Origin: Lepidodermella squamata
Taxonomy: Eukaryota > Animalia > Gastrotricha
DNA length: 64,000 nucleotides
NCBI GenBank assembly: GCA_047495785.1
Contig: JBLDXI010000020.1
Span: 2,418,001-2,482,000 of the forward strand
Direction of reading: 5' to 3'
In this document: piece after piece, positions 6,201 through 47,797 of the stretch
How positions within the stretch are numbered: the stretch's first letter is position 1
Layout of the letters: every line of letters starts with the position of its first letter
The notes under the pieces: model-generated
The model's input: only the letters and a program-made list of their open reading frames with translations
Databases searched by the model: none
What the model was told of the DNA's origin: nothing
Made by a program: the position numbers and the translations under genes

Positions 6201-9200
6201 TCTATCGTAAGCGTCGTAAAAAAATAAATATAACCAAAAATGCACGGCGAATCATGCACAAGGCAGTAGTAATATCGGTGACATAAGTAAGAAATATCAG
6301 CCCACGGAATGAATTGTAAAACTCAAGAAGGTCAATTATCAAGTCATTATTGTTATTTGTCGGTTTTGTCATCTTTTTTGTGACTGTACAAGATTGTCCG
6401 GGATTTTTCATGATTTTGGCTAGAGCTCTTTTTATTCAGGGTAGAAAAGGAGTTCAAGTACGTCACCTTTTTTGACGTATTCTTTGAGAATTACCCGTTT
6501 AGAAATAAGAGGAAACAAAACACAAAATAAATCAATGAAATAAACGTTGGTGTGAAGTTTAAATTTAAATACCTTGAACGTTTCCTTTGATCCGGATTCA
6601 AAATTGTTCGACTTATCGTCCAGCTTAATTTCATCGGTTTTCTTGTTGTTTTCGCCAAAAAGTTGGACAAAAACATTTGCATCCGTACCAGAGCCCCGTT
6701 CCTTACCGGTCCAAATGGTAATTTCATATGGTGCAGCTGAAAATGAAAAAAAATCCTAGTAAGAACATGGAGTATAATTTTGAGATAGAAAATATGTGCT
6801 CGATAAATATAAGAAAATCTGCGTTCGAGAACATATCTAGGACGGACAATATAGTCGCTAAAAACTGTACCCGTTGAAATTATCGTTATTTCGTCTATTA
6901 ATTTACAGTATTTCATTAATTCAAATTGACACATAAAAAACGACAAAATGTCCCTTTCGGACGAACAAGTACCTTTTTCGACTTCCTTCATCGAAGTAAC
7001 AGGAAGCACGACTTCTCCATCGCTGGCTTTAATCCAGCGACGAGCTGGGCAGAGATACTCAAGGCCAAGCTGTGGCACGTTTATAGTCACGTCCTCGAGG
7101 TACCAATCAGCTCCTCCACCGCCTCCGTCATGGCTGACCTTGATCTGCTTCAGTTTGCCGATATCGTCAAGTTCAAAGGTAAATTTATCGACGTTATTCC
7201 GCTCGAATTTGTTAACAGTGTGCGTGTCTGATGTTTTTAGGGGCATTCGGGAAGTCTCCAATTTTTCGCCTCCAAAAGTGATGAAAACATTTGCATCCGT
7301 TCCGGCGCCGAGTACATCGCCAGTTTTCACCAAAACTTCGTGCGTTATTTCTAAATAGACAAAAATGAATAGACTTATAGTGAAATAAAATAAGCTACTC
7401 ACTTTTAATCGCAAGGGATCCAAATTCGGTTAGGTCGCGTTCAATTTGACCATCGTCTTCGTCTTTCGCCAGCCAGCGATTGCATGGGAATATCTGCTCG
7501 GGACCACCTTTTCCACTCAGTTCTTTCACCAACACCTTTTCCAAATACCACCCAGGCGCGCCTCCACTATTGTCATGGCCAATGCGAACGCTCTTGATGC
7601 GCTTCAGGTCAACGGCTTCGATTATGAATACATCGGTCTGTTGAAAATTAAACGATGAAAATTTCAACTCTCAATTCATTAGAATTATTCAGCCACTGAC
7701 GAGACAACATGTCTGATGCGATAAGTACCGCTAAGATTTGTGAATAATTACGAAAATAACGTAAAACTTCTCACCGAGCCTGTTTCAAATAATTTCTGAC
7801 AACACGATCAAATGAAAGCTGAATTTATGTACTAGTAATTATTGTAGATGGCTTACTTGTCCTGTTTCAAATTTGTTCTTGTTGGTTGAGGATTTTTTCA
7901 GAGGCCGATCGCCAGTATCACCGCGTTCACCATTCAAGCAGCAGTAAACATTTGCATCGGTACCAGATCCCATTTTGTTGCCAGTTACGACGCTGACCTG
8001 GTATTTAAGCAATGGAAGAGGCTCTCTGATGCCGTCACCCGTCGCCGGTAATTCTCGAATTATTTCACCATCCTCCTCATCGACGGCAAGCCATCGACGG
8101 CAAGGGAAGGTATAATGCCGACTTCCGCTGGCAGCTTCAATCTACAAGGCAAAATATTTTAAATCATGGTAGATACTCAGGTAATCCAGCACGAACCTTA
8201 TCCAAATGCCAACCCGGGGCAGCGCCTTTGTTATCATGCCACACGCGAAGTTTATAAGGAGTTCCAATGTCTTCAGCTGGAACAACAATATCGTCGATTT
8301 TGCCGGTTTCAAACTTTTGACCCGCCCCCTCGAATCGCAGCATTTTCGTCTTGCCCTTGTCGCCGTATAGCATAACAAACACATGGGCGTCTGTTCCAGA
8401 TCCCGTCAAGTTCGATGTGAACACGCGGAAATGCCATTGAGTTGTATCGCCTGTGTGGTTAAAGTTACGAGTTAAAAATGAATAAAATATTGTCAAAAAG
8501 AAAGCGATGGGGCAAAAAAATTAAAATGGCCAGGTATAGCTTATGTTTCACTTCAGCAACATAGAAATGATCAAATGCCTGAATAACAAACCATATTTTT
8601 GCGATTTATCCGATACTTGAATGTTTCAAATCATCAGTACCAACCTGAATTTGCGAAAAAAAAGTTGGTTACTTACCATATTTCTCATCACCCATCTGCC
8701 CAGGTACAAGCTCAACCCATACGTGACCGCGCGATCTGTCACCGCCAATCCATCGCCGACATGGGAATTCAGTGATTCGGCTATCGTCGAGATCTTCAAC
8801 GATTACTTTCATGAGGTACCAGCCGGGATGAATGCCATTGTTGCAGTTTCGGATTCTTATCTTACGAAGAACACCAACCGAAGGCATTCTGAGTAAAAAC
8901 GCATCTTCACTAGCGCGTTCGAATACCCGCAAGTAGGGCGTTTCCAGGCGCACACTTTCCGAGGTACCGAGCTCTCCAATGAGCTGAATGAATATATCTG
9001 AGTCTGTGCCTGCGTCTGGTTGCTTTCCTGTATATGTGATGACTTTATAGCGGCGCTCTTTGCGTCCATCCAGGGGATGTAAAGAGGCTGGGAATTCTCG
9101 AGATATAACGCCGTCATCGTCGTGTATACTGAGCCAGCATCCACAAGCGAAGAAGTAGCGCTCGCGAGGATCGTCACGATTGCTTATCACAATTCGCTCG

Positions 9201-13030: not shown

Positions 13031-16000
13031 ATGCCAGCGTTTCAGACGAAAACTATCGAAAGCATTTTGGAACCAGTTGCTCAGCAGGTATATGGTTTTT
13101 GTTATGAATTAGTGCTACTGCCGTGATGATAATTACAGCGTTTTAACGCGCGAGCCGAATCGCCCTTAATAAGCACTTTGCTTGTCGCTAAACAGCAAGT
13201 GCAATCGGTAAAAGAGCGCTTCCGCAGCGCGCGATGGCATTATTTTACGATGACTACTGACGATCAAACGCAGCATGTTGCCGTTTCGTTATATATGGGC
13301 GTACACACTTGTTTATTCAGAGCTATTGTTTGCGGCCGCTGTTGGCTTTTCTTTTGTCTCTTCCTATTTGGCTCGAAATTAAAAGACGGCGTGTTGAGAC
13401 CGGAATTTACATATAATAGTGTAATGGTGCGACCCAGCAGCAGTAGTGGCGTTGCGCATTTATTAGGCGATAGAAATAGCCCTTGCCGCTATTAAGCTGT
13501 ATTTCGCGAGTATTTTGCCACGGTTTTGTTTTTGCAGCAGCAATTTACATTGTTTCACTACGCGCTTGATGTGTGCTACCCTTCCAGAGGTGTTTTGCTT
13601 ATTTATTACATAGTCGCGCAACGGAAGATTACGTTATTCACGTATTACTTCCTCATTGGCTTCCGGCCGAGATATGGTGGAAAAGTTATCGATGATAGGC
13701 TTTTACGACACTAATCCTTCTACGGAGTTACTATTATGAGCCGAATAAACCCGCTATGTTTATGATTAATATCCGCGGCAGCTACCGTCTTATTCCATTG
13801 ATAACTTCTGTATGTGCGGTGGCACGCTAAGTGGTACTTATTTTGACAAGCTAGGCGGTAAACAAGATGTAAAGAAATTGCTATAAAACAGCAATGCACT
13901 GTATTTAATGTGATTCTTAAAGAAACAAACTCGTTATTTTAATGTAGGTGTCGAGACTTGTGGTTCTTCATGAAGAAGCCGAGAGAAGCGGCGGCGTTAT
14001 GCCGGATTTATCGTTGCACGTCGATGGCGTGCAGAGCGCGGTTGAAAATCTGGTGAAAGTCGGAATTGAAACGGTCGAAAGTAGCGATGACCAGATTTTG
14101 CGTCAAGACATGCCGGCTATGTTGCGCCGCGTCCAGGAAGCGTGTGACCAGCTCGTCGATGCTTCGACGATGCTGCGTGAAGACGCGAATTCACCCGATG
14201 CCCGTCAACTGCTGATAACTGGCTCGCGTGGCATTCTTCGATCCACCTCGTTACTGCTGATCACATTCGACGATTTTGAAGTCCGGAAGCTGGTTAAACT
14301 GTGCAAAATTGTCCTTGATTACCTGGTGGTAGTTGAAGTTCTCGACACAATGAATGATCTGGTTGAATTCGTCAAAGTGAGTGTGAAAAAATTGAGAAAA
14401 AGAAGAAAAGAATAATGAAAAATTCGGTATTTATCAATTACTTATCGTATTTATTTTGTAGAATTTGAGTCCTGTCTTGGCGCGGCTTTCTCGTGAAGTC
14501 TCTCAACGGGCGAATGATCTCACAAGTCACGAGCGAAAACAATCACTGTCGTTGCAACTCGACGTTGTACACAGCCAGATGCCCAACTTGGCTAATGCCA
14601 TCAAAACCTACATTTCCACTAGAAATCGAGGTTCTAGCATTTTGTTCTCAAGTGTCCTTGTAATTAATTCTTATATCTCCATACAGGTAATGCCGTGCAA
14701 GAGGCAATAGAGAATCGCAACGTTTTATGCAGTGCTATGACCAACGCTATCAAGGAGGTTAGTTTAGGCCCTGCTAATTTATGGAATTTTACGTGCTCCT
14801 TCTTACATCTGCAAATTTTGTTTTAGATAATGTCGATTCTACAAGCTAATCCGTTGGTGGATGACGAGGCGTGGAATTTCGAAGACCCATCGACAGCTCG
14901 TAGAATGATGCTGACCTACCACAGCCAGCAAAGAACAGCCCATGATTGGTTACTGGACACATCGGCCGTCGCCGGTTGTCTCGGCGAACGTGTTGTGCGA
15001 GACATGTTGGCTCTGGCTGAGCAATTCGCCGATCGTTACGCTACAGGCGCTATAGTCATCCTACCAGATCGACCCGACGAGGATCGAGAGGAGGGAAGAG
15101 CTGCGATTATTAAGGCGGTTCGAGACGCGCGTTCAATGATAGATGCTGTTAGTGAGCTGCGGAATCAAAACAAGGGAGCTACCCCTCAGTCGTTAGCCCT
15201 CGGTCGAAATACCGAGGACAAGCTGAAAGTCATCGGAAGAGTTATGTCTTCTGTTGTCGACTCTTTCGAAGACGCTCGACAGGGCCCGGCGCCTCGTTCT
15301 GCGAATGTCTTGACCCTGGATCAGCAGGAACGACCGACTTTATTAGTCCGGTTGGCTCGATGCCAGGATTTGCTGCAGCACCAAACCGACCCTCATTCAC
15401 TTTTCGAAGCTTCTCAACTAGCGAGAAGTGTTTCTGATGATATTTTACGCGATATCAACGCGTTGACCGGGCATCCTTCACATCAGAGTTTTGCTACATT
15501 AGCCGGGTGTAGCCAGGCGTTAGGCCAGGCTGCCAACGATTTAGCCGCATCGATCAAAACTAACTCGGTTCACTCGCCGGCGGGAATTAACGCCCAAACG
15601 TGTACAGGCTCGTTAGCTCGGCAGGTATTCAACGAATACCAGCATTTGCTGGCTCGAATGGTCGTCGACCAATTTGCGGACGCGAAAGGGCCGGCTGAAG
15701 TGTTGTTTCGTTGCGCCATGTTGGGGAATGACGTACCCGACCGAGTTCCTCGTTTCAACACCGCGGCTCGTAATTTCGCGGCTCACGCCACGCAAATTTT
15801 AACATGCGCCCGAATTCTCGGCCAATCAGCGTTCACTGAGGACAGATTGACCCTGTCGCGTTTATGGACCCTGACAAACCAGCTGACAGATTATGCCGGT
15901 CAAATGGGTCGATCGGCCGCGATTTGCTTCGACAACCCCGGCGAACGGTCTTCCGCTGAAAACCTACTTCTGATATTGAAACAGTGGAAAGAAGGCGTTG

Positions 16001-17638
16001 ATGAGTTGTGCCGATGTGTTGATGATTTGATTGACACTATCGTGTTTCTTGGGCTGTCTGAAAAGGCGTGCGAGGACGAGTTTCTGCGCGCTGAATCTAG
16101 TCTAGGCAGTGGCAATCTGGCGACAAGTTCCGCAGATTTCCTGGCCGCAGCGGCACAAATCGCGCGCTGTGCCACGCGTGTTGCCCAGGTCGCGTTTCGC
16201 GAGGCTGAGAATTGCGACGACCCAGCCTTCGTGCAGGTCGTTCAGCACGCCGCTAATGAGGTCAACACCGTTCAAGATCAAATGATGCAAACTGCCTCTT
16301 TTCTGGCTGGCACGAGCATGGCGGATGCCAGTGCTCAGACGCAATGGCGCCAGTTGACGCAGAAAGTTGTCGACCAAGTCGCTACTCTTCGACGTATTTT
16401 TGAAGAGTATGTGTCCCAATTCGGCAATACGGACGTTTTTAGCCGGGGCGAGGGATCAACAGCCGATGGTACGTATCTCTCTTCTATTTCAAATCCCTTT
16501 ACTAATTATTTTTCTTTATCTAAGATCTTGGATCGCCTCCTCCTAGACCTCCGCTGCCGCGAACCCAGGTCACATCGCCGTTTTCAGTCTCCAGCGAAAT
16601 GGAGGATGAAGCCGAGGCTGAGGCCCGCCAGTTGTTCAGAAACGGCATCGAACACGCTGCTGTCAACCCTTCAGCTAATCAAATTCACCACCCGACCCAG
16701 CCTATCCTGAAAGCTGCTTATGATTTACATCAAGAAGCCGGCCAGTGGAGCAGTCGAGACAACGATATTGTCGCTGCTGCGAAGCGGATGGCTATCCTAA
16801 TGGCGAAATTGAGCCAGCTCGTGAGGTAAATAGTCTTAATTTCTGAAATTACATAGGTTGTTTACGAAATTTTCGCAGAACGGATGGCGGCTCGAGATGC
16901 GACCTCATCGCTATCGCGAAAGCGATCGCTGAGCAGTCGCTTGTGGTAACCAGATTGGCGACAGATCTAGCAGCTCACTGCACTGATAAACGCATCAGAA
17001 CCATGCTGCTTCACGCGTGCGAGAGATTGCCTACGATTGGCAACCAGCTGAAAATTCTAGCGACTGTCAAAGCTACGATGATTGGTCAAAATGGTAAATT
17101 TTACAGCCGAGTTGATAGGATTTCGAATTTAGGGTTTATGTTCTGGTAATAAATGTTGTTTGAATTAGCCCAAGCTTATAGAAAAAGAACTTCGTCCTCT
17201 TATGAGCGGTCTCAGGAAGAAGATGAAAGTGAACTCACTGCCGGTAATCACGCGACCTGATTTCCCGCGTGATTGAAACCCGCTACCATAAAAATAAGAA
17301 ATAAATGTGGCGAGAATAACCTATTAACATTTTTGGCATTTCAGCTTGTCTTTTCATTTATCTCTTCAACTTTGATTTCATTCTTTCTTTTTTTTACAGT
17401 TACCGAGGAAGATCAAGAGGCGACTGAAATGTTGGTTGGAAACGCCCAAAATCTGATGACCAGCGTCCGTTACACAGGTTAACCTGAGCCACCTTGTAAA
17501 ATCGAGATGAGTAATGTCATTTTATTCGTTGTAGTTCGGTGTGCCGAAGCTGCTTCGATTCGCATTCGCGTTGACTCTGGAATGCGAGTTAGGTGGGTAC
17601 GACGCCGACCTCTGGCGATGTTCAACAACACGAATTGA
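13031..17638 (+). CDS. VCL: Vinculin (multi-exon; exon 1 is 13031-13087, followed by an 860-nt first intron)
   Basis: N-terminus [19 protein letters not shown]|[10 protein letters not shown]. Tail reads [32 protein letters not shown]...CTDKRIR...[20 protein letters not shown]...[18 protein letters not shown]...[21 protein letters not shown]. Confidence 0.95.
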
Positions 17639-25753: not shown

Positions 25754-27394
25754 TCACCATTTTGTCCAAGCCTCGGCGCCTAGAGCTTGAATGGCCTTGA
25801 TGCGCGGGCGAGCGATCTTCAGCCAAATCATGCCAATGAAAAGACACAGAACACACTCGACGTAGTAACCGTCGATCAACGGAGCCGGTTTGCCGTCGCT
25901 CGTATCAGCGAGCGGATTTTTGAAAGTCAGATCTTGAACGAACCAAAGCGCAACGGTGACTGGCCAATTTCCGCCCAGGTTCGTAAAAGTGTTCAGCAAA
26001 GTCATGTAAGTGCCACCAAGACGAGGATCACTTACTTGGGCGTGATATGCCATCATGTTCACGAAAACACCATTAGCGAAAACTTGGTGAATCATGTGGC
26101 ACGCTATTAGCACGGCGTAATAATAATAAGGAAATTCTCCGCCGAACGAATGAGTCCAATAGACTATGAACGGGTAAGCATTTGCAGTTAACATGCGGTA
26201 AAGCGTGCTATCCAAAGCTGCGAGCAAAGGCTTCGGACCTGACGAAATGTGAGAAATCGCCAGAGGAAGAATTAGTTGAATGGGTGTTAACGGGATTGCC
26301 ATCATCGCCATTCGATCGCGCGTCATACCAGCCTCAAGCATTTTTAATCCAGTAACACCTTCAGCAGCAGCATAACCGACTTTCCAGGTCAACAACAATA
26401 CTACGTAAGATCTCACAATAGGTAGGCAGCAAATATGATACAGCTGGCGATAAGTCTCAATTATAGATGTATTGCTTTGATGCTCGGGATGACTAACTTC
26501 GCGTTTGAACACGCAAACTGTAATTGTTCCGATAATAAAGCACACTCCCCAGAATTTAAGAAAGCCAGCAAGAGAGATAAAACCTCCTTCTTGAGGGATT
26601 TCGCGAACGTAAGTGTTGGCGAAATGAGAAGATTCGAGCGTGAGAAGGACGACATGTCCGATGAAATAACCCGCTGTTTGACCAACACTATTGCAGGTAG
26701 ATGCCCAACCAACGTGACGTTTAGGTAGCATGGTTAAAGCCCACCCATCGACGGCAATGTCTTGAGTGGCCGCTAGGAAATTTAGCAGCAGAAAAGTTGC
26801 TGTAATTGAAAAGATCTGTCGAGCGGCTAAATTATAATAGAACAATAAATACTAGTTGAAAAAATGCAATAGTTTATTACCCAAAAGATCGTTCACGCTT
26901 GTGGACAGGACTAACATCATCGCACCAATGAGTAACTGGCTTGCCAAGACCCAAGTCTTTCGTAAACCCAAGGCTGGTATGCATTTTGTATCAACAATAG
27001 GAGCCCACAGAAGCTTCAAACTAAATGGCCAGAAAGCAAAGCTAAAAACAGCTTGTTCGTGATAAGAGATGCCAGCATTTTGAAGTAACGTCGGAATAGC
27101 GCCTGTGCAAGTACATTAATGAGAAATATAAGCTAAATGTCAGGGCGATTGTTGAGAATATACTTGAAATGCCCAAGGGAATCCCTTGCAACACGTATAA
27201 GAACATTAAAACGCCAACATTTCGCCAAAAGACTCCATTTTTTTTATCCTCAGCGTCATCCTTCCCGTCGTCCCCTTCTGTAAATTGATTGAGATTGATA
27301 TAGATGATGATGTTGGGCGATACTTACCATCTGACAGCTTGGATTTACTGTCAGCTGCTTCCAGTTCGAAATTCGACAGAACTTTACGCTTCAT
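25754..27394 (-). CDS. SLC33A1: Acetyl-CoA transporter 1 (AT-1), 3 exons
   Basis: LMFLYVLQGIPLG, QAVFS.AFWPFSLKLLWAPIVD, RKTWVL..QL.IG, FLAATQDIAVDGWALTML...VGWASTCNSVGQTAG, VSDP.LGGTYMTLLNT..NLGGNWP. Confidence 0.95.
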
Positions 27395-38730: not shown

Positions 38731-41507
38731 GAGCCTATCTCCATTCCAACCACATTTCACTTTCGTTCACTTTCACTAATCTAATATCAGATTTCAAACT
38801 CGCCAAATTCAACAGTCAATGCTAGTAGTCATTCCAAGAATTTGCACTTTGTCGATTTTAGGCGACTAACAAGCTAATACGCCGAGCCTGACATTTGAAG
38901 ATTTCACGTCGCTATACTTTCGACCAATGATGAAGTCGGGTTCGCATCTTAGTGAGATGGATGAGACGACTGACGGTTCTATTCATCACTACACGAATAT
39001 GATTTCACGAAAGAGTAAGGTAGAGCAGGTCGTGCGGGGGATAAAAACTAATGATAAAGAGTCGTTAAAACTGAGCCGTCAAGCTGATGGGACCATTCTC
39101 CGGACCCAGAATACGATCTCCAAAAAATGATAAATGGTGTTCAAAAAATAATAAGGAGTTATATATAGCATTGATTCGGGTTCTTCGCGATAAAAGCTCG
39201 CATGTCGAGAAAACAAGGAGTGTTAGGCATTCATCACTCAGGACACGTTTTCAGAAACGCCAGACCAAACTGAGAAAAATGATGAATGGGTGGATGCTAT
39301 GCCCTGCCACCAATTCGGGCGATTTAAAAGAGCTTGCGTTTATACGGGAGAAAACATGTCCTCGATACTTCTGTGTTAAGCGCAGGGATAGCACAACAGT
39401 ATACAGAAATAAATGACGAAAATAGAGTTATGAGGTATGATCCATGTGGTCCGCCCGGACACCTACTCGATAAAAATCGCTGCAGGTGGGCAGCTTTGTG
39501 ATGAGAGGTCGAGCATGCCAGCAATGAAGAAGTCAGTTTGGCTGAGAGCCTTGGAGCCAAAGATGAGGGATAAGTGTTTTAGTCGATCTTGCTATTCGAC
39601 TTCGTGGGCTAAAGGCTGCATTTGTCGGAGATGCGGAGTGCGGGATTCACAGGTAGATTCAACTCGTCGAGACACTCGACAGACGCTTCACCGTGGCTCA
39701 GGAAGGTCATTTTGTTTCCTCCAATATGTAATTTGTCCCTGAGCAACAAGGTGAGTTGAAATGCAAAATGCAAGACCATGCTCTAAGAAGCTCTATCTAG
39801 CAAATATCTTACTACGTTGATGACCCTTCCGTGCATCGTGCATCAATGTCTAATATAGTCGAGGCACAATGTAAACTACCGCAACACAGTACTTCGCAAT
39901 AATGGGAAATGGAAATGTAGATAATGTATAATGTATGGTGTAACAATCATGACGCAACATAAGCATTAACCAATCAAAAAACCTATGCGTTCAATTGGGA
40001 GGACAAATGTTGGAAACGAATTAAGAATTCATATGCTATTCTAATTTGTGATAAATTAAAGCTAGGAGAGAGCTCAAAGCTTAAAGACACCATACACCAT
40101 TTAAAAACACGGTTTTGTCTAACTCTTTCTTTCAAAGAACCCGGCGCGCTCCGCTATGACACTTGGGACTTCAGACACAAGTGGAATCGCCATGTTATAT
40201 GTATCATGTCTCTTCGTGTCCTTGCCGTCCATTTTCAGTTTTCTAGCTACAAAGATTTTAAATCCGGAATTCAACTTCCAGCAAGGCAAACAAATCATCA
40301 TTCAAAAGAGAATGTAATAAGAGCCATTCCACCATGCACAGACCAGAGACCATAGAGACAGTTTCGCGAAGTCAACCGACGCATCGATCGACGTGATTTT
40401 TTAGATAAAATTTTAAAACATCGGTCGCTTTTAATAAAAATATTTCTTTTTGATTTTGGAAACAATATCATTTTAAAAATTCTTTCGAAGTTTAAAATAT
40501 TTAAACGATAATTAATTTAGCTGCAGTATATTTGTCATTAATGGTTAACTTTCGCGAGCGTTTTTGTCCCCGAAAGTCTTTGACACCTCTGTTACCTGTT
40601 ACCTGTGACAATTAGCAATAAATTATGATTGTTTCATTTTGTTGCTGATTAGGAAAATATTATACGCTTGACTTATTCAAAGACTTGATTCTTGGATTCA
40701 ATACCAATGATGAGGTTCTTGAACCGGTGGAAACGACCCAGTAGCCATTTGCCGCTGCAGAATCATTGTTGCTCAATCGGCCAGGCCGAGAGCCACATGG
40801 AGAGCCCTAGTTCCTCTGCACAGACGCACACAACTCCACATCACATTTTTTGAAAATTGAGGCAATCGTTTTTTTTGAACAACTTCCATCAGCCATCAAA
40901 TAATTTAACGCAAGACGCAAGTAAACCAAAAGCCTTGTCGTTCTTTTCATGCAATTTTAAGTATAGACGCCTTATGCAGAACAAGGTGAATAAGGCGTGA
41001 GAGATGCACGAGAAACTTTATGAATGGAAACATCCTTTTCAGTCGCTTGCGAATGAATATCACGCACACACGAGGTTTCCTCGCAACGCTAGACTCGCCT
41101 TTTAATAGGCAATATTTTTACGATGTTTCCTTAGGAACAACTCACCGGGTAATAACTTATTCTGCCGCGGCGTATTGCAGGATTTCCGGATAACTAGCCA
41201 TTATCTAATTTGGGTTGTGTCATATTGTTGTCCCCGAATCTTTGCAGCGAAACTTACAATCCTTGGATTGACTAATATAAATTTTCCACTTTGAAACTAA
41301 TTGCTATCTTATGTAGGTAGGTAGTTGCCTTATAAAAAATTACCTTATAGGTATAGTAATTAGTAATTTAAGTAATAAGTCATCATTACAATTCTAATAA
41401 ACAGATTAGGGCAGCCTATTTGTATCTGATTTCACCTTAATAAGCTTTTAGATGATACTTTTATATTAAATGATAATGAAATAATCAAACAGTTGTGATA
41501 TTAACGT

Positions 41508-44500
41508 ATGGCGGACGATGACGGCGAGTATCATGTCCCAGTTGGAATTCTCGTAGCGGCCGCCGTAGTGGGTGTTATCTTTATCGGAGTTGCAATAGGC
41601 CTTTGCTGCTATTTCTGCTTACCCCGCAATCACAAGTGTCGGCGGATCTTTAAAACCAACCGAAGATCGCAAACATCACCCGTAGATGGCCGCCCATCAT
41701 TGGTAGAAGAGGAAAACTGTTGTGCCTCTTGTTGCCAGTGTGGGTCTCGACCTCCACCATGGCGCGAGCCATACTCACCGACTCCCAGTGAGCAAGCTCG
41801 AGGATTTATTCTCATTGACCCCTATATTATTACAGTGGACAATGATAACAGACATAGACCGCCACGCAGGCGCAGGGAGGACGATTGTTGCAAGAAATGC
41901 TGCCAGCCATGCTGCGCTTCTACGTCGGCTGATTGTTGCAATAATAAATGTTGCTATCCATGCTGCGTTCCTATACCGACTGCAATCCCTCAGACTCGGC
42001 CTCCACCTCCAGTTATAAATACAATACAACCGACACCCATTCCTCCTATTGTTCCAGTTCCCATTCCAACCCCAGTTGTTGCTCAGCAGCTATTTTTCAC
42101 TCGTCAGCTTTCCGAAAAAATTCTATCAAAAATTCCTGATAAAGCTGTTTTTGAATGCGAACTCAATCAGCCCAATGCGACAGTGAGCTGGACAAGAAAT
42201 GGATTCCCAGTAGATCGCCGCCGGGCAAAGATCGAAAGCATTGGCCGCATTCATCGGTTAACTATTGACAAAGCCGATCCTGGAAATGATGAAGGGACCT
42301 ACGAATGCTCTGTAATTCCAGCTCAACCCTACAACAACTTGTCCTCATATCCGAAAACGGCTGGTGAATTGAAATTTCGAATAGTCCCGACAATGCAGCT
42401 TGACAAGTATCTAAACAAAATTACCGAAGTTAAGGTGGGTTCTGTGGTTTATTTCCACATACCTTTCACGGGGCAACCTCGACCAAAAATAACTGCTAAG
42501 CTCAACGGTAAGCCATTGCCCGACGTTTCAAGAATGACTATATCGGATGCTGGTCGGGAGCAAGTTGCTATCTTCACGATAAACGATGCAAAACGGAGTG
42601 ACTCAGGCACGTATACTATCACTGCTGAAAATGATAGTGGCAAAGTTGTCGGCGATCTTGTATTATCAGTTAAAGGTAAGCTAAATCGATATTAATTTTT
42701 CCGAAATGAACGCTTCTGTTTTAAGATCGACCGTCACCACCCAGAGACTTCAATGCATCGGATACCTTGGCAAAATCGACCAGGTTGAATTGGCTGAAAC
42801 CAGCTGATGACGGGGGTTCACCGATCGAAGCCTACGTTATTGAACGTCGATTCGATTCGGGCCCTGGCAAACAAACAGACCATCCATGGGAAACTATTGG
42901 ACGCTACACCCCAGAAACTCTACAGGCTTTATTCGCTGATTTGAAGCCAAACAGTCCTTACTCATTTCGGGTCGCAGCATTTAACAAATACGGGGTCTCA
43001 GATTGGACAACCCTGGTCATGACTGCTAAACAAGGCATTGAGCTTCCCGGCAAACCGAACGTCCCGCATATAGCTGAAGCATCTGCTTCTCGATGCCGTG
43101 TGAACTGGTCGCCACCTGCCTCTGACGGTGGCGCCCCTATTAGCAAGTACGTTGTCGAGTTCGCCGAAGCGGGCACGAATGATTGGCAACCCATACCGCG
43201 TCAGCCGGCCTCGACGTTGCCTCCCTTGTCAGTTCCAGTGTCAAACCTGGTTGAAAACAAGAAGTATCAGTTTCGAGTCGCAGCTGAGAATTCAGCTGGC
43301 CTTGGGCCGTTCAGTGATCCATCTAGACCAATGTCAGCTAAAAACCAGTTCAACCCGCCGAGCAAGCCTGATCCGCCACGTGTAACTGAAGTTTTTCGCG
43401 ACAAGTGTCGCGTCGATTGGCTACCGCCTCCATCGGATGGTGGCAGCGCGGTCACCAGCTATTTCGTCGAGAGGGCTCCAGCTGGCACCAACGCCTGGGA
43501 ACCTCTGCCTAAGATCTCTTCAAATCCTCTTCCACTTACTACGCCAGTAGCTGGTTTATCTGAAAATGGCGAATACCAATTCAGGATAGCTGCAGAGAAT
43601 AAGGCTGGGCGAGGGCCATGGAGCGACCCTTCTAAAGCAATAACTGCGAAAGATCCGTGGCAAGTCCCAAGTAAACCTAATCCGCCGAAAGCTTCCGATA
43701 TATCTAAGGCTAATTGCCGCTTGAATTGGGAGCCACCATTGAGCGATGGTGGTGCGCCAATTACTCGGTATCTGATCCAAAAAGCTCCAGTTGGAACGAA
43801 TAATTGGGAATCGATACCAACTTTCACATTTCCGACTGCTCCTCCACCTACGTCTCTGCCAGTTGATAGGTTGGATGACAAGAAAAAGTATCAGTTTAGA
43901 GTTGCTGCGGAGAACAAGGCCGGCCATGGTCCTTTCAGTGACCCTTCAGATCCCATTGCACCCATAGATCCAACTAAAGTGCCCAGCCGGCCTGGTCGGC
44001 CTGAAGTTACAGATTTGACTACCAATTCGGCTAAAGTCATCTGGTCACCTCCTGCTTCTGACGGTGGAGCGCCTATTACCGATTATGTCTTACATCTCCA
44101 GCCGAGCAATAAACCGGATTCTCAGGCGGTGGATTTACCTGTAGGTAAACCAGCAACTAATCACGTGCTCAAAAATTTGAAACCCGACGAGACCTATCAA
44201 GTGAAAGTTCGCGCGAAAAATGAAGTCGGTTTAAGTGAACCTAGTGAGCCAAGTGTCCCAATTCGAGTCAGGGTTCCTACGCCGCCTCCTACGCCGAAGA
44301 AAGTCGAAAAGGATGCGCCACCCTCTGATTCAAAACCTCCTATAAAGCCGACACCAATACCCCCTGTTATCGTGCTTCCGGTAGCTAAAGCTGAACCAGT
44401 CAAAGAAACGAAACCAAGCCCGTCTCCGCCCGCAGCAAAATCACCAGCTCCAAGGTCTACCCCAGATCAAAAGCCGGAGCCACAACCGCAGAAGCGGCTG

Positions 44501-45106
44501 CTTTCTCCGCCAAGGCAAGAGCCGCAAAAAGTAGCTCAAACAAATCCGAAGCCCGAGGCAAAGCCGCCGTTGCAACCCGAACCTAGAAAAGAATCGAAGC
44601 AGCCAAAGCCTGTGACAAGACAGCCACGGCAACCTGAACCTAGGAAAGAGCCAAGGCAGCCAAAGCCTGAGACGAGACAACCACGGCAACCTGAACCTAG
44701 GAAAGAGCCAATGCAGCCAAAGCCTGAGTCGAGACAACCACGGCAACCTGAGCCTAGGAAAGAGCCAAGGCAGCCAATACCCAGGCGAGAGCCAGCGCCA
44801 CCCGTACCTAAAAGGGAACCTCGTTCAAGATCTGAGCGACCTTCTAGGCCAGTATCACTACCCACTAGGCGAAAAGCAGCTTCAGTGCCACGCACACAGC
44901 CTGTTGTTTCAAACAAACGAGTTCGATTCACTGCAGCTCCAAAAGCAGCAGATTTTGGAAGCCGGTACGATACGCCACCGAAAAAGCCCAAAAAGGACAG
45001 ACTAGATCGTCTCAACGATCCAAAGCCGGAATTTACCACCTTTTTCGGCATGCAGTCGAACTCGCTGAATCGACACGACATTATGCGTAAAGTTACCCAG
45101 TTTTAA
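41508..45106 (+). CDS. Single-pass membrane protein: TM, Cys-rich, Pro-rich, 2 Ig, 5 FN3 (titin/twitchin/MyBP-C type), PEVK-like tail; exons 41508-42675 and 42726-45106
   Basis: Hydrophobic helix VPVGILVAAAVVGVIFIGVAIGLCC. I-set Ig motifs AVFECEL...VSW..NG...HRLTI...DEGTYEC and IPFTGQPRPKIT...KRSDSGTYTI.AEN..G. Five FN3 domains with W.PP.SDGG.PI..Y and Y.FRVAAEN.AG. The splice VK G|gtaag..aag|AT gives the canonical VKDRPSPP linker. Confidence 0.88.
44573..44777 (+). repeat. Coding tandem repeat with a 57-bp unit (QPEPRKEPRQPKPETRQPR), about 3.5 copies
   Basis: Near-identical units caacctgaacctaggaaagagccaaggcagccaaagcctgagacgagacaaccacgg. Confidence 0.9.
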
Positions 45107-45468
45107 GAGCGGATTAATCAAAAAAGGTGCCGAACACATTTTCGAAAAAAGAAACTGGCTGAATTTCTTATTATATTTTATTGCTGTTATTAGTGTGTTA
45201 TAATTATTATATCAATGAGATGAAAAATGATGCTCATAAATTCTATGTACTTCCGCAAAGAAATTCCAAGTAAAATTTTATCAATGTGACCAAAAAGAAA
45301 AAGAACGATAATTCATTGGATGACATAATAGTGCCGAAATAACTGTATTGCATCAGCAGTAAACCGGCTTCAATAAGCAGGAAAATAATAAGAAAGATCG
45401 CTCACATCAAGAATCTAAAACAATCTGGCAAGACATTCAAAACGATTGATCATGGAAAAAATTGAGAG

Positions 45469-47797
45469 TTATTGATGATGAGCAGTTAGAGCAACACGAG
45501 GTGATGGCGCTTCAATGCCATTTGCATCAACTTGTATACGCCCGATAGCTTCGGACAACAACCGCACTTCGAGATCAGCGTTAGGGTTTGTTTTGTTGCG
45601 AAACTCAATATTACCGGAATTGGCCAAGAACAACAGAGATACTAAACTGCGAGCACCTTCACGGCGAATGCTCAAATTGAGCTTTTCAGCGTCGGCGTTT
45701 TTTCCCTCTTTATCTTTCACCATTTTCATCACGGTTTGTTCTAGAGAAAACCACTTCTTCTTGCCAGTTTGCTGGCCAACAGCGACCATTTTCGCGCAGT
45801 AATCATTGACGTCGAATGGGCTTCGTTCGATAGCGCTTAGGCGGTTCTCGACGTAGCGATCCCACTCCTGGACGCGTTTCAGCCTGCTTTCGTCGAAAAC
45901 ATCAGGCGGCAACATTTCCTCCAAATTTTGGACCTCAGGCAAAGGCTCCAATCCACCGTTCATTTGATTATTATCACCAGCAAGACCTGGCAGGTCAAGA
46001 GGAGGCTGTTCACCTGAATCAACAGGCGGCTCTTCATTATCGCTCTCGTCATCCTCGTTACCAAGCCCGCCTTCTCCAAAAACTTCTTGCGTGAGCGGAA
46101 TTTCGACGTCATCTCGCAGCGCCTCGGCTACCTCGATTTCATTTGTTGCTTCTCGTAATTTCGACGCTTGAGACTTTCGGCCGCATGCAACTAGTACGTT
46201 GTCGTTGAATTTTTGAACCATTTGCTCGGACAGCTCGACTGATACCGAGTCGGCAATACTAGCCGGCATTTGAGCGGGCGGTTTCAATGGCGGCATATCT
46301 GATTAAAATATAATTTAAATAACTCCTTTATCAACAATTATTGAATTACGTTGACTGAAAATATCGTCGGATTTGTTAGAAGTAGAAATGTTAAGTTTCG
46401 TGGCACTAGCCGATGACCCGTCTTTTTGCTTCTGGTTCGGCAATTTGTACGGTTTTCCTGGTGCTTTAGCCAACGGTTTTGATTTCTTGGCCTCCATTGA
46501 ATCGTCGTACGGATCAAGGCGGGTAAGGAATTTATTGACATTAGCAGCGCCGACTGTCTTAGTTCGAACAAGACGCTCTTTACTAGGCATTGATTCTTGA
46601 CTGAAAATGTCCTGGCTAGGGTTCAAATCGGAATCCCAGAGAGGTTGCGGGGCGTATTCTGGCATCGAAGATTGCTGGGAGGCGAATTGAGATTCGGGTA
46701 AAGCAGTAGATTGGCTCGGAGGGTCTTCGATCATCAGATTGGGACAGAGATCTGAAACAAAAGTTACAGCAATTGAACATGCAATTGAGCTAAAACTTAC
46801 TCAAAACTGGTTCGCTACGGGATTCGAGTTTCACAGGTTCGGTAAAAAATGCGTCATTATCGATGAAACCGGGATCTTCCGTTTCTTCGTCATCGTTATC
46901 TACATCCATCATTTCCATGGTCCGATCGGGATTAGCCGATGTTCCTTCAAGCAGACGCACGACTTGCTCGACATCAAAAGTGTTCGAGTAGAAATCGCAA
47001 TAATCGCCAAGAGCGTCGCCATTCACACTGAAATTGGGCAAATAATGAAGAGAAACTCTTTTTTCAGGACTACGAACTTTTTAATCTGAATTGCTACAGG
47101 TAACCGATACACAGGGTGTAGGTCGAAATTGATTCGAGGCCGTAAAGTGTTTTTTGTATCGATGTCGCCGCTATTTTTGTGCAGATCTATATTCTCGCAC
47201 TCGGTTACAGTTACCGGACGGAAAATGTCTTTCGGAGATCGCAGGTCTTCCAAGGTCCAACCGGCAGTCTTTTGCTTTTGCTTTTTCGGCACATTTTCGG
47301 GCTGCGTGGGACCATTGCTGTCTTCGCTATGAATATCATGCATGTCTGCTCCGTTTTGATCCGACTCCCTGCACAAAATTACGCAGGGTATTACTTATTG
47401 AGTTTCAAATGTCTCAAACTAACTTATTGCCAGTTACGGCACGTTGTAAAATCAGGTGGAGGAAATCGTCCAAACTATCGACCTAGTAGTGATATTTTTG
47501 CAAAATTATGAAATTACCTCATGAATGTTTCTTACCTTCTTTCCCCATACTTTGGCAGCCTTAGAGACAATGAAAGCGGGCTCAGTGAAGTTGAGCTTAG
47601 AGTAACCATCGTCAGCGGACAAACAATCTTGGAGCTGAAACAAGCAGTAATTTTATCCAACTGAGGCAATTCTAACTTGGACAAACTCTTTTCGAATATT
47701 CCTCCAAATATTGTTCCAATGGAATCTCCCAAGCTTGGGCGTGATTCTTCTCATTCAGCAAATTTTCAAAATTATCGGTGAAGCTGTCAGATGACAT
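45469..47797 (-). CDS. NCAPH2: Condensin II kleisin subunit CAP-H2, multi-exon
   Basis: Spliced N-terminus FENLL....AQAWEIPLEQYLEEY...LNFTEPAFIVSKAAKVWGKK|VDSL. Middle LDPYD....KP...GKPYKLP. C-terminal VQEWD....RL.......FDV.DY...ARSL.SLL.LANSGNIE. Confidence 0.85.

What the first reader, a model, noticed from the sequence alone, without database searches (positions are those of the whole stretch)
41508..45106. Membrane-anchored mini-titin: sarcomeric-type Ig/FN3 modules behind an N-terminal transmembrane anchor
Seen: an acidic N-terminus (MADDDGEY), one ~24-aa hydrophobic helix with no separate signal peptide, then basic PRNHKCRRIFK, Ig-Ig-(FN3)5 and a P/E/K/R/Q-rich tail. The TM and Ig domains are in one continuous exon. 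Established: the PPxSDGGxPI and FRVAAENxAG FN3 signature belongs to intracellular titin/twitchin/MyBP-C/myomesin proteins, which normally lack TM segments, and the positive-inside rule predicts N-out/C-in. Inference: this is an integral membrane protein presenting myosin-binding-type modules to the cytoplasm, possibly tethering filaments to the sarcolemma or SR. I know of no described protein with this architecture.
Basis: partly seen in the sequence, partly recalled or inferred. Interest (0 to 1): 0.8.

Follow-up and report, generated by a model that had tools for sequence, protein, structure and literature searches.

The report
Membrane-anchored titin-type Ig/FN3 protein
A small invertebrate has a real two-exon gene for a protein that starts with one membrane-spanning helix and continues with a rod of muscle-type (titin/MyBP-C-like) modules that should face the cell interior; I found this combination described in no paper and in only one other, related, uncultured organism.

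Summary
A two-exon gene at 41508-45106 (+), with one 50-nt GT-AG intron, encodes about 1,182 residues. In order these are a 9-residue acidic N-terminus, one strongly hydrophobic helix, a basic and Cys-rich juxtamembrane stretch, a roughly 155-residue disordered linker, two I-set Ig domains, five FN3 domains, and a Pro/Lys/Arg-rich tail ending in a conserved C-terminal peptide.

An ortholog on an ENA metagenome contig has the same helix, the same CCYFC motif, the same domain order, and the same intron position and phase. It also has the same downstream neighbour. At saturated synonymous divergence the helix is conserved at least as well as the Ig domains, so it is translated and functional.

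Charge (-4 on the N side, +7 on the C side), helix length and the absence of a signal peptide predict N-out/C-in. In solved structures, Ig1, Ig2 and FN3-1 to FN3-4 match MyBP-C or titin best. FN3-5 is ambiguous.

Still untested are the 5' end of the transcript, the topology, the tissue and the binding partners. A membrane-to-myofilament tether is inference only. A profile of the N-terminal module, searched against 1.84 billion proteins, found only the one ortholog.

Verdict: real, and a new variant of a known kind; moderately interesting.

The parts
41508..42675 (+). Exon 1: start codon to splice donor. It holds 389 full codons plus the first base of the junction codon.
   Evidence: ORF list and sequence. 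GT at 42676. The ortholog has the same exon end and phase.
41508..41534 (+). Short acidic N-terminus (MADDDGEYH, net charge -4), predicted to be extracellular or lumenal.
   Evidence: The ortholog has MSHDLP at this position.
41535..41621 (+). Single transmembrane helix (residues 10-38, VPVGILVAAAVVGVIFIGVAIGLCCYFCL), with the conserved CCYFC at its cytosolic end.
   Evidence: Kyte-Doolittle 2.9. AF2 models a helix at 12-37 with pLDDT 76-85. Conserved in L001: pN 0.27, and 17 of 20 identical residues use different codons.
41622..41666 (+). Basic juxtamembrane flank (PRNHKCRRIFKTNRR, net charge +7).
41718..41741 (+). First Cys cluster (CCASCCQC), partly conserved: two of its Cys residues align in the ortholog.
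41757..41837 (+). Conserved juxtamembrane motif P..(P/A)YSPTPSE..(R/K)GF(I/V)L(I/V)(D/E)PY.I.
   Evidence: Alignments A2 and A3. pN 0.30. A contig of the cDNA-like run covers 41757-41829.
41886..41966 (+). Second Cys cluster (CCKKCCQPCCASTSADCCNNKCCYPCC). It is a lineage-specific insertion, absent from the ortholog.
41967..42083 (+). Pro-rich linker. It is the end of the roughly 155-residue stretch that is modelled as disordered.
   Evidence: pLDDT is below 50 for residues 38-192. The ortholog is Pro/Gln-rich here.
42090..42386 (+). Ig1, an I-set domain of MyBP-C/obscurin type. It keeps the Cys pair (C217, C267).
   Evidence: Pfam. Best domain-level PDB match is cardiac MyBP-C residues 557-681, 36 bits.
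42387..42675 (+). Ig2, an I-set domain that lacks the canonical disulfide Cys pair in both species.
   Evidence: Pfam I-set at 305-388. MyBP-C residues 961-1060 score 34 bits and titin 25 bits.
42676..42725 (+). Intron: 50 nt, GT..AG, phase 1.
   Evidence: The ortholog has a 52-nt intron at the same position and phase. No read spans the junction.
42726..43033 (+). FN3-1 (divergent, AAFNKYGVSDWT), preceded by the DRPSPP linker.
   Evidence: Pfam. Best single-domain PDB hits are titin at 47 bits, against 35-37 for extracellular domains.
43037..43339 (+). FN3-2.
   Evidence: Pfam. Titin 8omw scores 62 bits.
43352..43654 (+). FN3-3.
   Evidence: Pfam. Titin 8oq9 scores 62 bits.
43664..43963 (+). 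FN3-4.
   Evidence: The nine best chains of one FN3 domain are titin or myomesin (45-62 bits). The best extracellular single domain is sidekick-2 at 35 bits.
43973..44266 (+). FN3-5. Its class is ambiguous.
   Evidence: Titin scores 51 bits; NCAM2, Dscam and contactin-4 score 52-55 bits.
44267..44911 (+). Disordered Pro/Lys/Arg/Glu/Gln-rich tail (PEVK-like in composition).
   Evidence: Composition. No Pfam match. Poorly conserved in the ortholog, but with similar composition.
44572..44777 (+). 57-nt (19-residue) tandem repeat x3.6 inside the tail.
   Evidence: TRF: 91% matches, score 328.
44912..45106 (+). Conserved C-terminal peptide (KRV.F ... PKK.RLDRLN..KP.F....GM..N.LNRHDI.RKVTQF) and the stop codon. 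It ends in T-Q-F, which fits a class I PDZ-ligand pattern.
   Evidence: Alignment A1. The motif was found in no other retrieved protein. The PDZ reading is inference.

Best explanation
This is a genuine protein-coding gene for a single-pass type III (N-out, C-in, no cleaved signal peptide) membrane protein.

Proposed layout. A 9-residue acidic N-terminus is translocated. One long, very hydrophobic helix spans the bilayer. Everything after it stays in the cytoplasm:
- a basic, Cys-rich juxtamembrane region, probably S-acylated at the conserved CCYFC;
- a roughly 155-residue disordered linker carrying one conserved YSPTPSE..GF.L..PY motif;
- a rod of about 30 nm made of two Ig and five FN3 domains of the intracellular titin/MyBP-C class;
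- a basic proline-rich spring-like tail;
- a conserved C-terminal peptide that could dock a partner (possibly a PDZ domain).

Proposed function. The most likely role is a one-polypeptide tether between a membrane and a cytoskeletal or myofilament structure. The length of the helix makes the plasma membrane more likely than ER/SR.

Shown here: gene structure, domains, conservation of the helix and of the architecture, and purifying selection.

Inferred only: topology, acylation, which membrane, muscle expression, and the binding partner.
For: - Gene model.
- Domains: Pfam finds 2 I-set and 5 fn3.
- Ortholog: L001 has the same helix, CCYFC, juxtamembrane motif, Ig-Ig-FN3x5 order, C-terminal peptide, and intron position and phase. 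It also has the same downstream CAP-H2 gene on the opposite strand.
- Selection on the helix: pS is saturated (0.8-0.9), while pN is 0.27 for residues 1-40 against 0.32 for the Ig pair. 17 of 20 identical residues use different codons.
- No other start: the next in-frame Met is near residue 297, and a stop lies two codons before the ATG.
- No upstream exon candidates: there is no plausible + strand ORF in the 3.8 kb upstream. The ortholog has only about 490 nt between the neighbouring minus-strand gene and its ATG.
- Topology determinants: N flank -4, C flank +7, a 26-29-residue helix with Kyte-Doolittle 2.9, and no second hydrophobic segment. AF2 models a helix at 12-37.
- Cytoplasmic-type features: Ig2 lacks the disulfide pair in both species; FN3-2 to FN3-4 each carry a single unpaired conserved Cys; only one of five N-glycosylation sequons is conserved.
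- Module class: cardiac MyBP-C is the best PDB match of the Ig pair (1.3e-34). Titin is the best single-domain match for FN3-1 to FN3-4. Every animal hit that carries a descriptive source name in the top 120 is titin or twitchin, and none is named as a cell-adhesion receptor.
- Expression: a run carrying a SMART cDNA oligo covers 41567-42652 and 42834-45186, but nothing in the bins covering 40300-41566 or the bin containing the intron (42653-42833).
- Reading frames: variants are 22 synonymous to 9 non-synonymous.
Against: - No read covers the TM-coding bases (41535-41621) or the splice junction, so the 5' end and the join are predicted, not observed.
- That run being RNA is itself a guess.
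- Topology rests on rules, not on an experiment or a dedicated predictor.
- FN3-5 is as close to extracellular FN3 domains as to titin. The margin for the other domains is moderate (about 47-62 against 35-45 bits).
- The DGGxPI signature also occurs in FN3 arrays from metagenomes, one of them named a phage tail protein by its source.
- Ig1 keeps its Cys pair.
- Nothing shows tissue, membrane or partner.
- Only two lineages carry the gene, so the conservation evidence has depth two.
Confidence: 0.62

Rival explanations
1. Type II orientation: the helix works as a reverse signal-anchor, and the Ig/FN3 rod is extracellular. The protein would then be an unusual adhesion or matrix molecule with a 9-residue cytoplasmic stub.
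For: FN3-5 scores equally well against NCAM2, Dscam, contactin and Robo. Ig1 keeps the canonical Cys pair. By language-model features, exon 1 looks like single-pass Ig receptors, though with scores of 0.86-0.88, below the level the tool treats as meaningful.
Against: The charge difference across the helix is about +10 in the wrong direction for type II, in this genome. It points the same way in the ortholog. Ig2 has no disulfide pair. The FN3 domains carry single unpaired Cys residues. CC clusters and a highly basic Pro-rich tail are atypical outside the cell. N-glycosylation sequons are not conserved. The Ig pair and FN3-1 to FN3-4 match sarcomeric proteins best.
Confidence: 0.12
2. Gene-model error: the mature protein lacks the helix because of a different start or an upstream exon spliced in after it. 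It would then be an ordinary soluble small titin/MyBP-C-like protein.
For: No cDNA contig reaches 41535-41621, and coverage starts somewhere in 41567-41747. The exon join was not seen in reads.
Against: The helix and CCYFC are conserved as protein at saturated synonymous divergence, better than the Ig domains. There is no in-frame Met between residue 1 and about 297. A stop lies two codons upstream. cDNA-like contigs cover codons 84-108, and the genomic sequence offers them no other in-frame start. There is no upstream + strand ORF.
Confidence: 0.1
3. Same topology, but the job is not in muscle. The protein would be a cortical scaffold in epidermal, neuronal or gland cells, or an anchor on an organelle such as ER/SR, using Ig/FN3 modules as a generic spacer.
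For: No expression or localisation data exist. Cytoplasmic FN3 domains do occur outside the sarcomere (integrin beta4, FNDC3, RIM-binding proteins; my own knowledge). Integrin beta4 and FNDC3A FN3 domains appear among the weaker PDB hits.
Against: The best matches are thick-filament proteins. This is resemblance, not localisation.
Confidence: 0.16

Closest known systems
Titin / twitchin / projectin A-band modules
   Same: The FN3 domains carry W..PP.SDGG.PI..Y and Y.FRVAAEN.AG.G. Ig2 is a disulfide-free I-set domain. The Ig-to-FN3 linker is DRPSPP. Titin is the best PDB match for FN3-1 to FN3-4.
   Different: This protein is about 1,180 residues, not 0.5-3.5 MDa. It has no kinase and no Ig/FN3 super-repeat. 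It has five FN3 domains in a row and an N-terminal transmembrane helix, which none of those proteins has.
Myosin-binding protein C / H
   Same: Cardiac MyBP-C is the best PDB match of the Ig pair (1.3e-34). Ig1 aligns to the C4 region and Ig2 to C8. FN3-2 and FN3-3 align to C6-C7.
   Different: It lacks the C8-C9-C10 (Ig-FN3-Ig) end, the M-motif and the C0-C2 head. It is membrane-anchored. MyBP-C is regarded as a vertebrate family (my own knowledge).
Myomesin / M-protein
   Same: The domain order Ig-Ig-FN3x5 is the same as My2-My8 of myomesin (my own knowledge). A myomesin FN3 domain scores 54 bits against FN3-4.
   Different: It has no C-terminal five Ig domains and no myomesin head. No myomesin hit for the Ig pair reached E<=1e-5. 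It is no closer to myomesin than to titin.
sAnk1.5-obscurin tether between SR and M-band
   Same: This is a functional analogy. sAnk1.5 is a small protein inserted in the SR membrane by a transmembrane domain. Its cytosolic tail binds a sarcomeric Ig/FN3 protein, and the pair holds the SR around the myofibrils (PMC9026860).
   Different: There, two separate proteins do the job and the membrane protein has no Ig/FN3 domains. Here the anchor and the Ig/FN3 rod are one polypeptide. There is no sequence similarity.
Integrin beta4 and FNDC3A/B (membrane proteins with cytoplasmic FN3 arrays)
   Same: They set a precedent for tandem FN3 domains on the cytoplasmic side of a membrane protein (my own knowledge). 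Both appear as weak PDB hits at 31-43 bits.
   Different: Integrin beta4 is a type I receptor with a large ectodomain. FNDC3 is anchored by a C-terminal helix. Neither has Ig domains or titin-type linkers, and neither has an N-terminal anchor.

Membership tests
Intracellular (sarcomeric) Ig/FN3 domain class | FN3 domains closer to titin, MyBP-C or myomesin than to extracellular receptor FN3 domains. | tested here: met
   For FN3-1 to FN3-4 the best single-domain PDB hits are titin (47-62 bits), against 35-45 bits for extracellular domains. FN3-5 alone is inconclusive. No tree with extracellular references could be built.
Intracellular (sarcomeric) Ig/FN3 domain class | I-set Ig domains that can do without the canonical disulfide. 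| tested here: met
   Ig2 lacks both Cys residues in the window and in L001. Ig1 keeps them, as many MyBP-C/obscurin-type Ig domains do.
Titin / twitchin / projectin proper | Giant size, a Ser/Thr kinase domain, and Ig-FN3 super-repeats. | tested here: not met
   The protein is about 1,182 residues. Pfam finds only I-set and fn3, with no kinase.
Myomesin family | Ig-Ig-FN3x5 followed by five C-terminal Ig domains (My9-My13), preceded by a myosin-binding head. | tested here: not met
   The first half of the domain order matches. After FN3-5 there is only a disordered tail with no Pfam match.
MyBP-C / MyBP-H family | A C-terminal Ig-FN3-Ig module (C8-C10) that binds light meromyosin and titin. 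| tested here: not met
   The domain order is Ig-Ig-FN3x5, and no Ig follows the FN3 domains. Similarity of the Ig domains to cMyBP-C is real, but it is not membership.
Type III (N-exo/C-cyt) signal-anchor membrane proteins | One hydrophobic segment near the N-terminus, no cleavable signal peptide, and a more positive C-terminal flank. | tested here: met
   The segment is residues 10-38 with Kyte-Doolittle 2.9. The N flank is -4 and the C flank +7. The n-region is acidic, unlike a signal peptide. The ortholog shows the same pattern.
Type III (N-exo/C-cyt) signal-anchor membrane proteins | Experimentally shown orientation and membrane insertion. | not testable with these tools
   This needs protease protection, glycosylation scanning or tag accessibility.
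Extracellular IgSF adhesion receptors (L1, contactin, Dscam, Robo, LAR) | An N-terminal signal peptide, an Ig/FN3 ectodomain, and a C-terminal TM helix or GPI anchor. | tested here: not met
   There is no signal peptide and no hydrophobic segment after residue 38. These receptors score lower than titin or MyBP-C for six of the seven domains.
FNDC3 / integrin beta4 (cytoplasmic FN3 membrane proteins) | A C-terminal tail anchor (FNDC3), or an integrin beta ectodomain (beta4). | tested here: not met
   The only helix is N-terminal, and there is no integrin domain in Pfam.

The most novel reading that the evidence does not exclude
This would be the first example of a sarcomeric-type Ig/FN3 rod joined directly to a membrane anchor. 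A single polypeptide would tie the sarcolemma (or SR) to thick filaments or another myofilament structure. Vertebrates do that job with separate proteins such as sAnk1.5 and obscurin. It would define a new, lineage-restricted class of membrane-cytoskeleton linker.
Probability: 0.3. Interest if true: 0.7.

Novelty: new variant of a known kind. Interest (0 to 1): 0.52.

Why it matters
How myofilaments are fastened to the cell membrane and the SR is understood mainly from vertebrates, flies and C. elegans. There it takes chains of separate proteins: integrin or dystroglycan complexes, and ankyrin with obscurin.

A protein that fuses a membrane anchor to titin/MyBP-C-type modules would be a much simpler solution. 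It would be a natural test case for what such modules bind, and for how far from the membrane a roughly 30-nm rod plus two disordered springs places its conserved C-terminal peptide. It would also show that the intracellular Ig/FN3 toolkit can be recruited to membranes by adding a short signal-anchor exon segment.

The limits are plain. The gene is known from one genome and one metagenomic relative, and there are no functional data.

Tried and rejected
- C-terminal tail search: a word-index protein search with residues 690-792 of exon 2 returned nothing. The conserved peptide is too short for that database size.
- Exon 1 word search: this also returned nothing at E<=1e-8 and missed even the known ortholog, so the blank carries no weight.
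- JGI metagenome scans: two scans, with exon 1 and exon 2 alignments, gave pattern matches but no confirmed relative.
- N-terminal profile search: the 114-position profile run against 1.84 billion representatives found only the ortholog's own exon 1. The three weak hits are tandem-repeat or unrelated membrane proteins.
- ESM Atlas look-alikes: exon 1 gave generic single-pass Ig receptors below the meaningful score. The FN3 region gave generic FN3 clusters. Neither helps to discriminate.
- Exact look-ups: exon 1's ORF is not on record. The ortholog's clusters hold only unnamed ENA metagenome members, so the organism could not be named.
- Upstream synteny: the upstream neighbours of the two loci are unrelated.
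- Myomesin homology: rejected, because the match is in domain order only.
- Mitochondrial outer-membrane signal-anchor: rejected, because the helix is too long and too hydrophobic. This is inference.
- WH2-like reading of the C-terminal peptide: considered and dropped, because the spacing does not fit.
- Paper searches: five searches found no description of this architecture.
Full report
**Gene structure**

The + strand carries an ORF from ATG 41508, with a TAA two codons upstream at 41502-41504. It runs into a GT at 42676. Fifty bases later an AG (42724-42725) restores a long ORF that ends at the stop codon 45104-45106.

The junction codon is G|AT = Asp. The join reads ...DLVLSVK-D-RPSPPRDFNASD..., which is the familiar Ig-to-FN3 linker of titin-family proteins. 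The product is 389 + 1 + 792 = 1,182 residues.

I did not type or join the spliced protein. All searches and the fold were done exon by exon by reference.

**What the protein contains**

- Pfam finds two I-set Ig domains in exon 1 (6.4e-23) and five fn3 domains in exon 2 (5.9e-72). It finds nothing in the first 200 residues or in the last 272.
- There is one hydrophobic segment, residues 10-38, with a Kyte-Doolittle 19-residue mean of 2.9. No window of exon 2 exceeds 0.73.
- The nine residues before the helix are MADDDGEYH (net charge -4). The fifteen after it are PRNHKCRRIFKTNRR (+7).
- Residues 33-153 hold 21 Cys residues, mostly as CC pairs.
- Residues 154-192 are Pro-rich.
- AlphaFold2, run on exon 1 with a two-sequence alignment, gives a helix at 12-37 (pLDDT 76-85), no structure for 38-192, and two beta-sandwich domains at moderate to low confidence.
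- The tail after FN3-5 is 25% Pro and 23% Lys+Arg. It includes a 57-nt unit repeated 3.6 times at 91% identity.

**An ortholog keeps the whole arrangement**

The FN3 search returned mostly titin fragments, plus one 819-residue ENA metagenome protein (P0002) that ends in the same C-terminal peptide. Its contig, L001, carries the following:

- An upstream ORF that starts MSHDLPVPVAVLAVAAVLGLLCIGVALAVCCYFCFP.
- The motif YSPTPSE..GF.L..PY.I, followed by the same two Ig domains.
- A 52-nt GT..AG intron at the same codon and phase, with the same GAT junction codon.
- Five FN3 domains, a basic low-complexity tail, and ...RLDRLN..KP.F....GM..N.LNRHDI.RKVTQF.
- The same downstream neighbour on the opposite strand, condensin-II CAP-H2.

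Identity is 51% for exon 1 and 48% for exon 2. The second CC cluster (residues 127-153) is an insertion in the window's lineage, and the ortholog is Gln-rich there.

**The helix is coding and under selection**

Between the two genes, synonymous sites are saturated (pS 0.80-0.92). The non-synonymous difference is 0.27 for residues 1-40, 0.30 for the juxtamembrane motif and 0.32 for the Ig pair. 17 of the 20 identical residues in 1-40 use different codons. Variants seen in public runs are 22 synonymous to 9 non-synonymous in the proposed frames.

**The start codon**

- There is no in-frame Met between residue 1 and about residue 297, and a stop lies two codons upstream.
- The 3.8 kb upstream holds no plausible + strand ORF.
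- The ortholog has only about 490 nt between the neighbouring minus-strand gene and its ATG.

**Expression**

Two public runs hold the stretch. X2 covers everything evenly and behaves like DNA.

X1 contains a SMART cDNA oligo and has contigs only in the bins covering 41567-42652 and 42834-45186, plus the next gene. It has none in the seven bins upstream (40300-41566), and none in the bin that contains the intron. That pattern fits a transcript of this gene.

It does not reach the TM-coding bases (41535-41621) and does not cross the splice junction. Contigs do cover codons 84-108. The genomic sequence offers those codons no in-frame start other than 41508.

**Topology**

Three determinants of signal-anchor orientation agree on N-out/C-in. 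These rules are from my own knowledge: Hartmann 1989, von Heijne, and Wahlberg and Spiess 1997.

- The charge difference is about +10 towards the C flank.
- The helix is long and very hydrophobic.
- The N-terminal stretch is very short.

The ortholog points the same way. An acidic n-region and an h-region of 26-29 residues do not look like a cleaved signal peptide.

Independent hints of a cytoplasmic location:

- Ig2 lacks the disulfide pair in both species.
- FN3-2, FN3-3 and FN3-4 each carry one conserved unpaired Cys.
- Only one of five N-glycosylation sequons is conserved, and that one sits inside the generic AEN.SGK motif.
- CC clusters next to the membrane are typical S-acylation sites.

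The helix length suggests a post-Golgi or plasma membrane rather than ER/SR (Sharpe et al. 2010, my own knowledge). This is inference.

**What kind of Ig and FN3 domains these are**

Against solved structures, the Ig pair matches cardiac MyBP-C best (1.3e-34, summed over many domains). At domain level, Ig1 scores 36 bits against the C4-C5 region and Ig2 scores 34 bits against C8. Two-domain constructs of contactin or Robo score about 42 bits in total.

| Domain | Best titin-family single-domain hits | Best extracellular hits |
|---|---|---|
| FN3-1 | titin, 47 bits | about 36-37 bits |
| FN3-2, FN3-3 | titin single domains, 62 bits | not compared domain by domain |
| FN3-4 | nine best chains of one FN3 domain are titin or myomesin, 45-62 bits | sidekick-2, 35 bits |
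| FN3-5 | titin, 51 bits | NCAM2 55, Dscam 54, contactin-4 52 bits |

FN3-5 is therefore not discriminated.

In the large search, every animal hit in the top 120 that carries a descriptive source name is titin or twitchin. However, the single best score went to a metagenomic FN3 array that its source names 'predicted phage tail protein'. Several FN3 arrays with no eukaryotic source name also rank high.

The conclusion that these modules are of the sarcomeric class is supported for six of seven domains, by a moderate margin. I could not build a tree with extracellular references, because no tool gave me such sequences.

**How widespread it is**

A profile of the first 114 alignment columns (helix plus juxtamembrane motif) was searched with HMMER against 1.84 billion representative proteins. 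It found only the ortholog's own exon 1 (1.3e-47). The three hits near E = 1e-3 to 1e-5 are repeat artefacts or unrelated.

Two JGI metagenome scans were blank, as were two word-index searches. None of the retrieved titin-like eukaryotic proteins has an N-terminal helix or the C-terminal peptide. The ortholog's clusters contain only unnamed ENA metagenome sequences.

The module is either confined to a poorly sampled lineage or diverges too fast to follow. The blank searches cannot tell these apart.

**The organism**

It is not named by any tool. Earlier notes of this scan call it a small short-intron invertebrate with a titin-type gene, miR-1/miR-133 and a PHRED-1-type receptor. These are unverified leads, not evidence. 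They make a muscle context plausible and hint at a spiralian.

**Mechanism proposed**

The layout is a type III membrane protein. Its cytoplasmic part consists, in order, of:

- an acylated juxtamembrane patch;
- a roughly 155-residue flexible linker with one conserved motif rich in Ser-Pro and Thr-Pro sites;
- a seven-domain rod of about 30 nm;
- a basic proline-rich spring;
- a conserved terminal peptide ending T-Q-F, which fits the class I PDZ-ligand pattern.

The best-supported function is a direct tether between a membrane and a myofilament or cortical structure. The nearest functional analogy is the two-protein sAnk1.5-obscurin link that holds the SR around myofibrils (PMC9026860). Integrin beta4 and FNDC3 are precedents for cytoplasmic FN3 arrays on membrane proteins (my own knowledge).

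It is not a member of the titin/twitchin, MyBP-C, myomesin, FNDC3 or adhesion-receptor families. In each case a defining feature was tested and not met.

**Verdict**

- The finding is a new variant of a known kind: known modules in an undescribed membrane-anchored arrangement, conserved in at least two lineages.

Noticed in passing
window 42970-43258 (and 42107-42194): The DNA-like run X2 yields two contigs of similar depth over the same 289 bases. They differ at 22 positions (7.6%), nearly all synonymous. The cDNA-like run shows the alternative letters at some of these sites. This means either two well-diverged haplotypes or two gene copies, both apparently expressed.
   Followed up: partly
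window 45469-46734 (-) and L001 4608-5570 (-): A condensin-II CAP-H2 gene (CNDH2_C, 4.4e-09) lies tail-to-tail just downstream, and is syntenic in the metagenomic relative. Cys-loop receptor genes follow in both loci.
   Followed up: partly
window 14830-16710 (+): A 626-residue single-exon ORF belongs to the vinculin family (PF01044, 1.7e-29). It lies about 25 kb upstream and is another membrane-cytoskeleton linker gene. No link to the finding was established.
   Followed up: no
window 299-7423 (-): Several ORFs carry repeated PLAT/LH2 domains (up to 1.4e-48). They are probably exons of one large PLAT-repeat gene.
   Followed up: no
window 25754-26845 (-): An ORF matches the acetyl-CoA transporter family (Acatn, 2.7e-72).
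   Followed up: no
window 45108: A contig of run X1 continues past 45108 into the SMART cDNA oligo AAGCAGTGGTATCAACGCAGAG. This marks the run as cDNA-derived. The orientation looks chimeric, so it does not define a transcript end.
   Followed up: no
window 41886-41966: The CCKKCCQPCCASTSADCCNNKCCYPCC insertion resembles the CCQP-type repeats of keratin-associated and other intracellular Cys-rich proteins. It is absent from the ortholog, so it is a recent lineage-specific gain.
   Followed up: partly
P0010, P0012: Annotated but unnamed mollusc proteins (Littorina, Lottia) consist of about ten consecutive titin-type FN3 domains with no Ig domains. They are another little-described sarcomeric-type FN3 architecture.
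   Followed up: no
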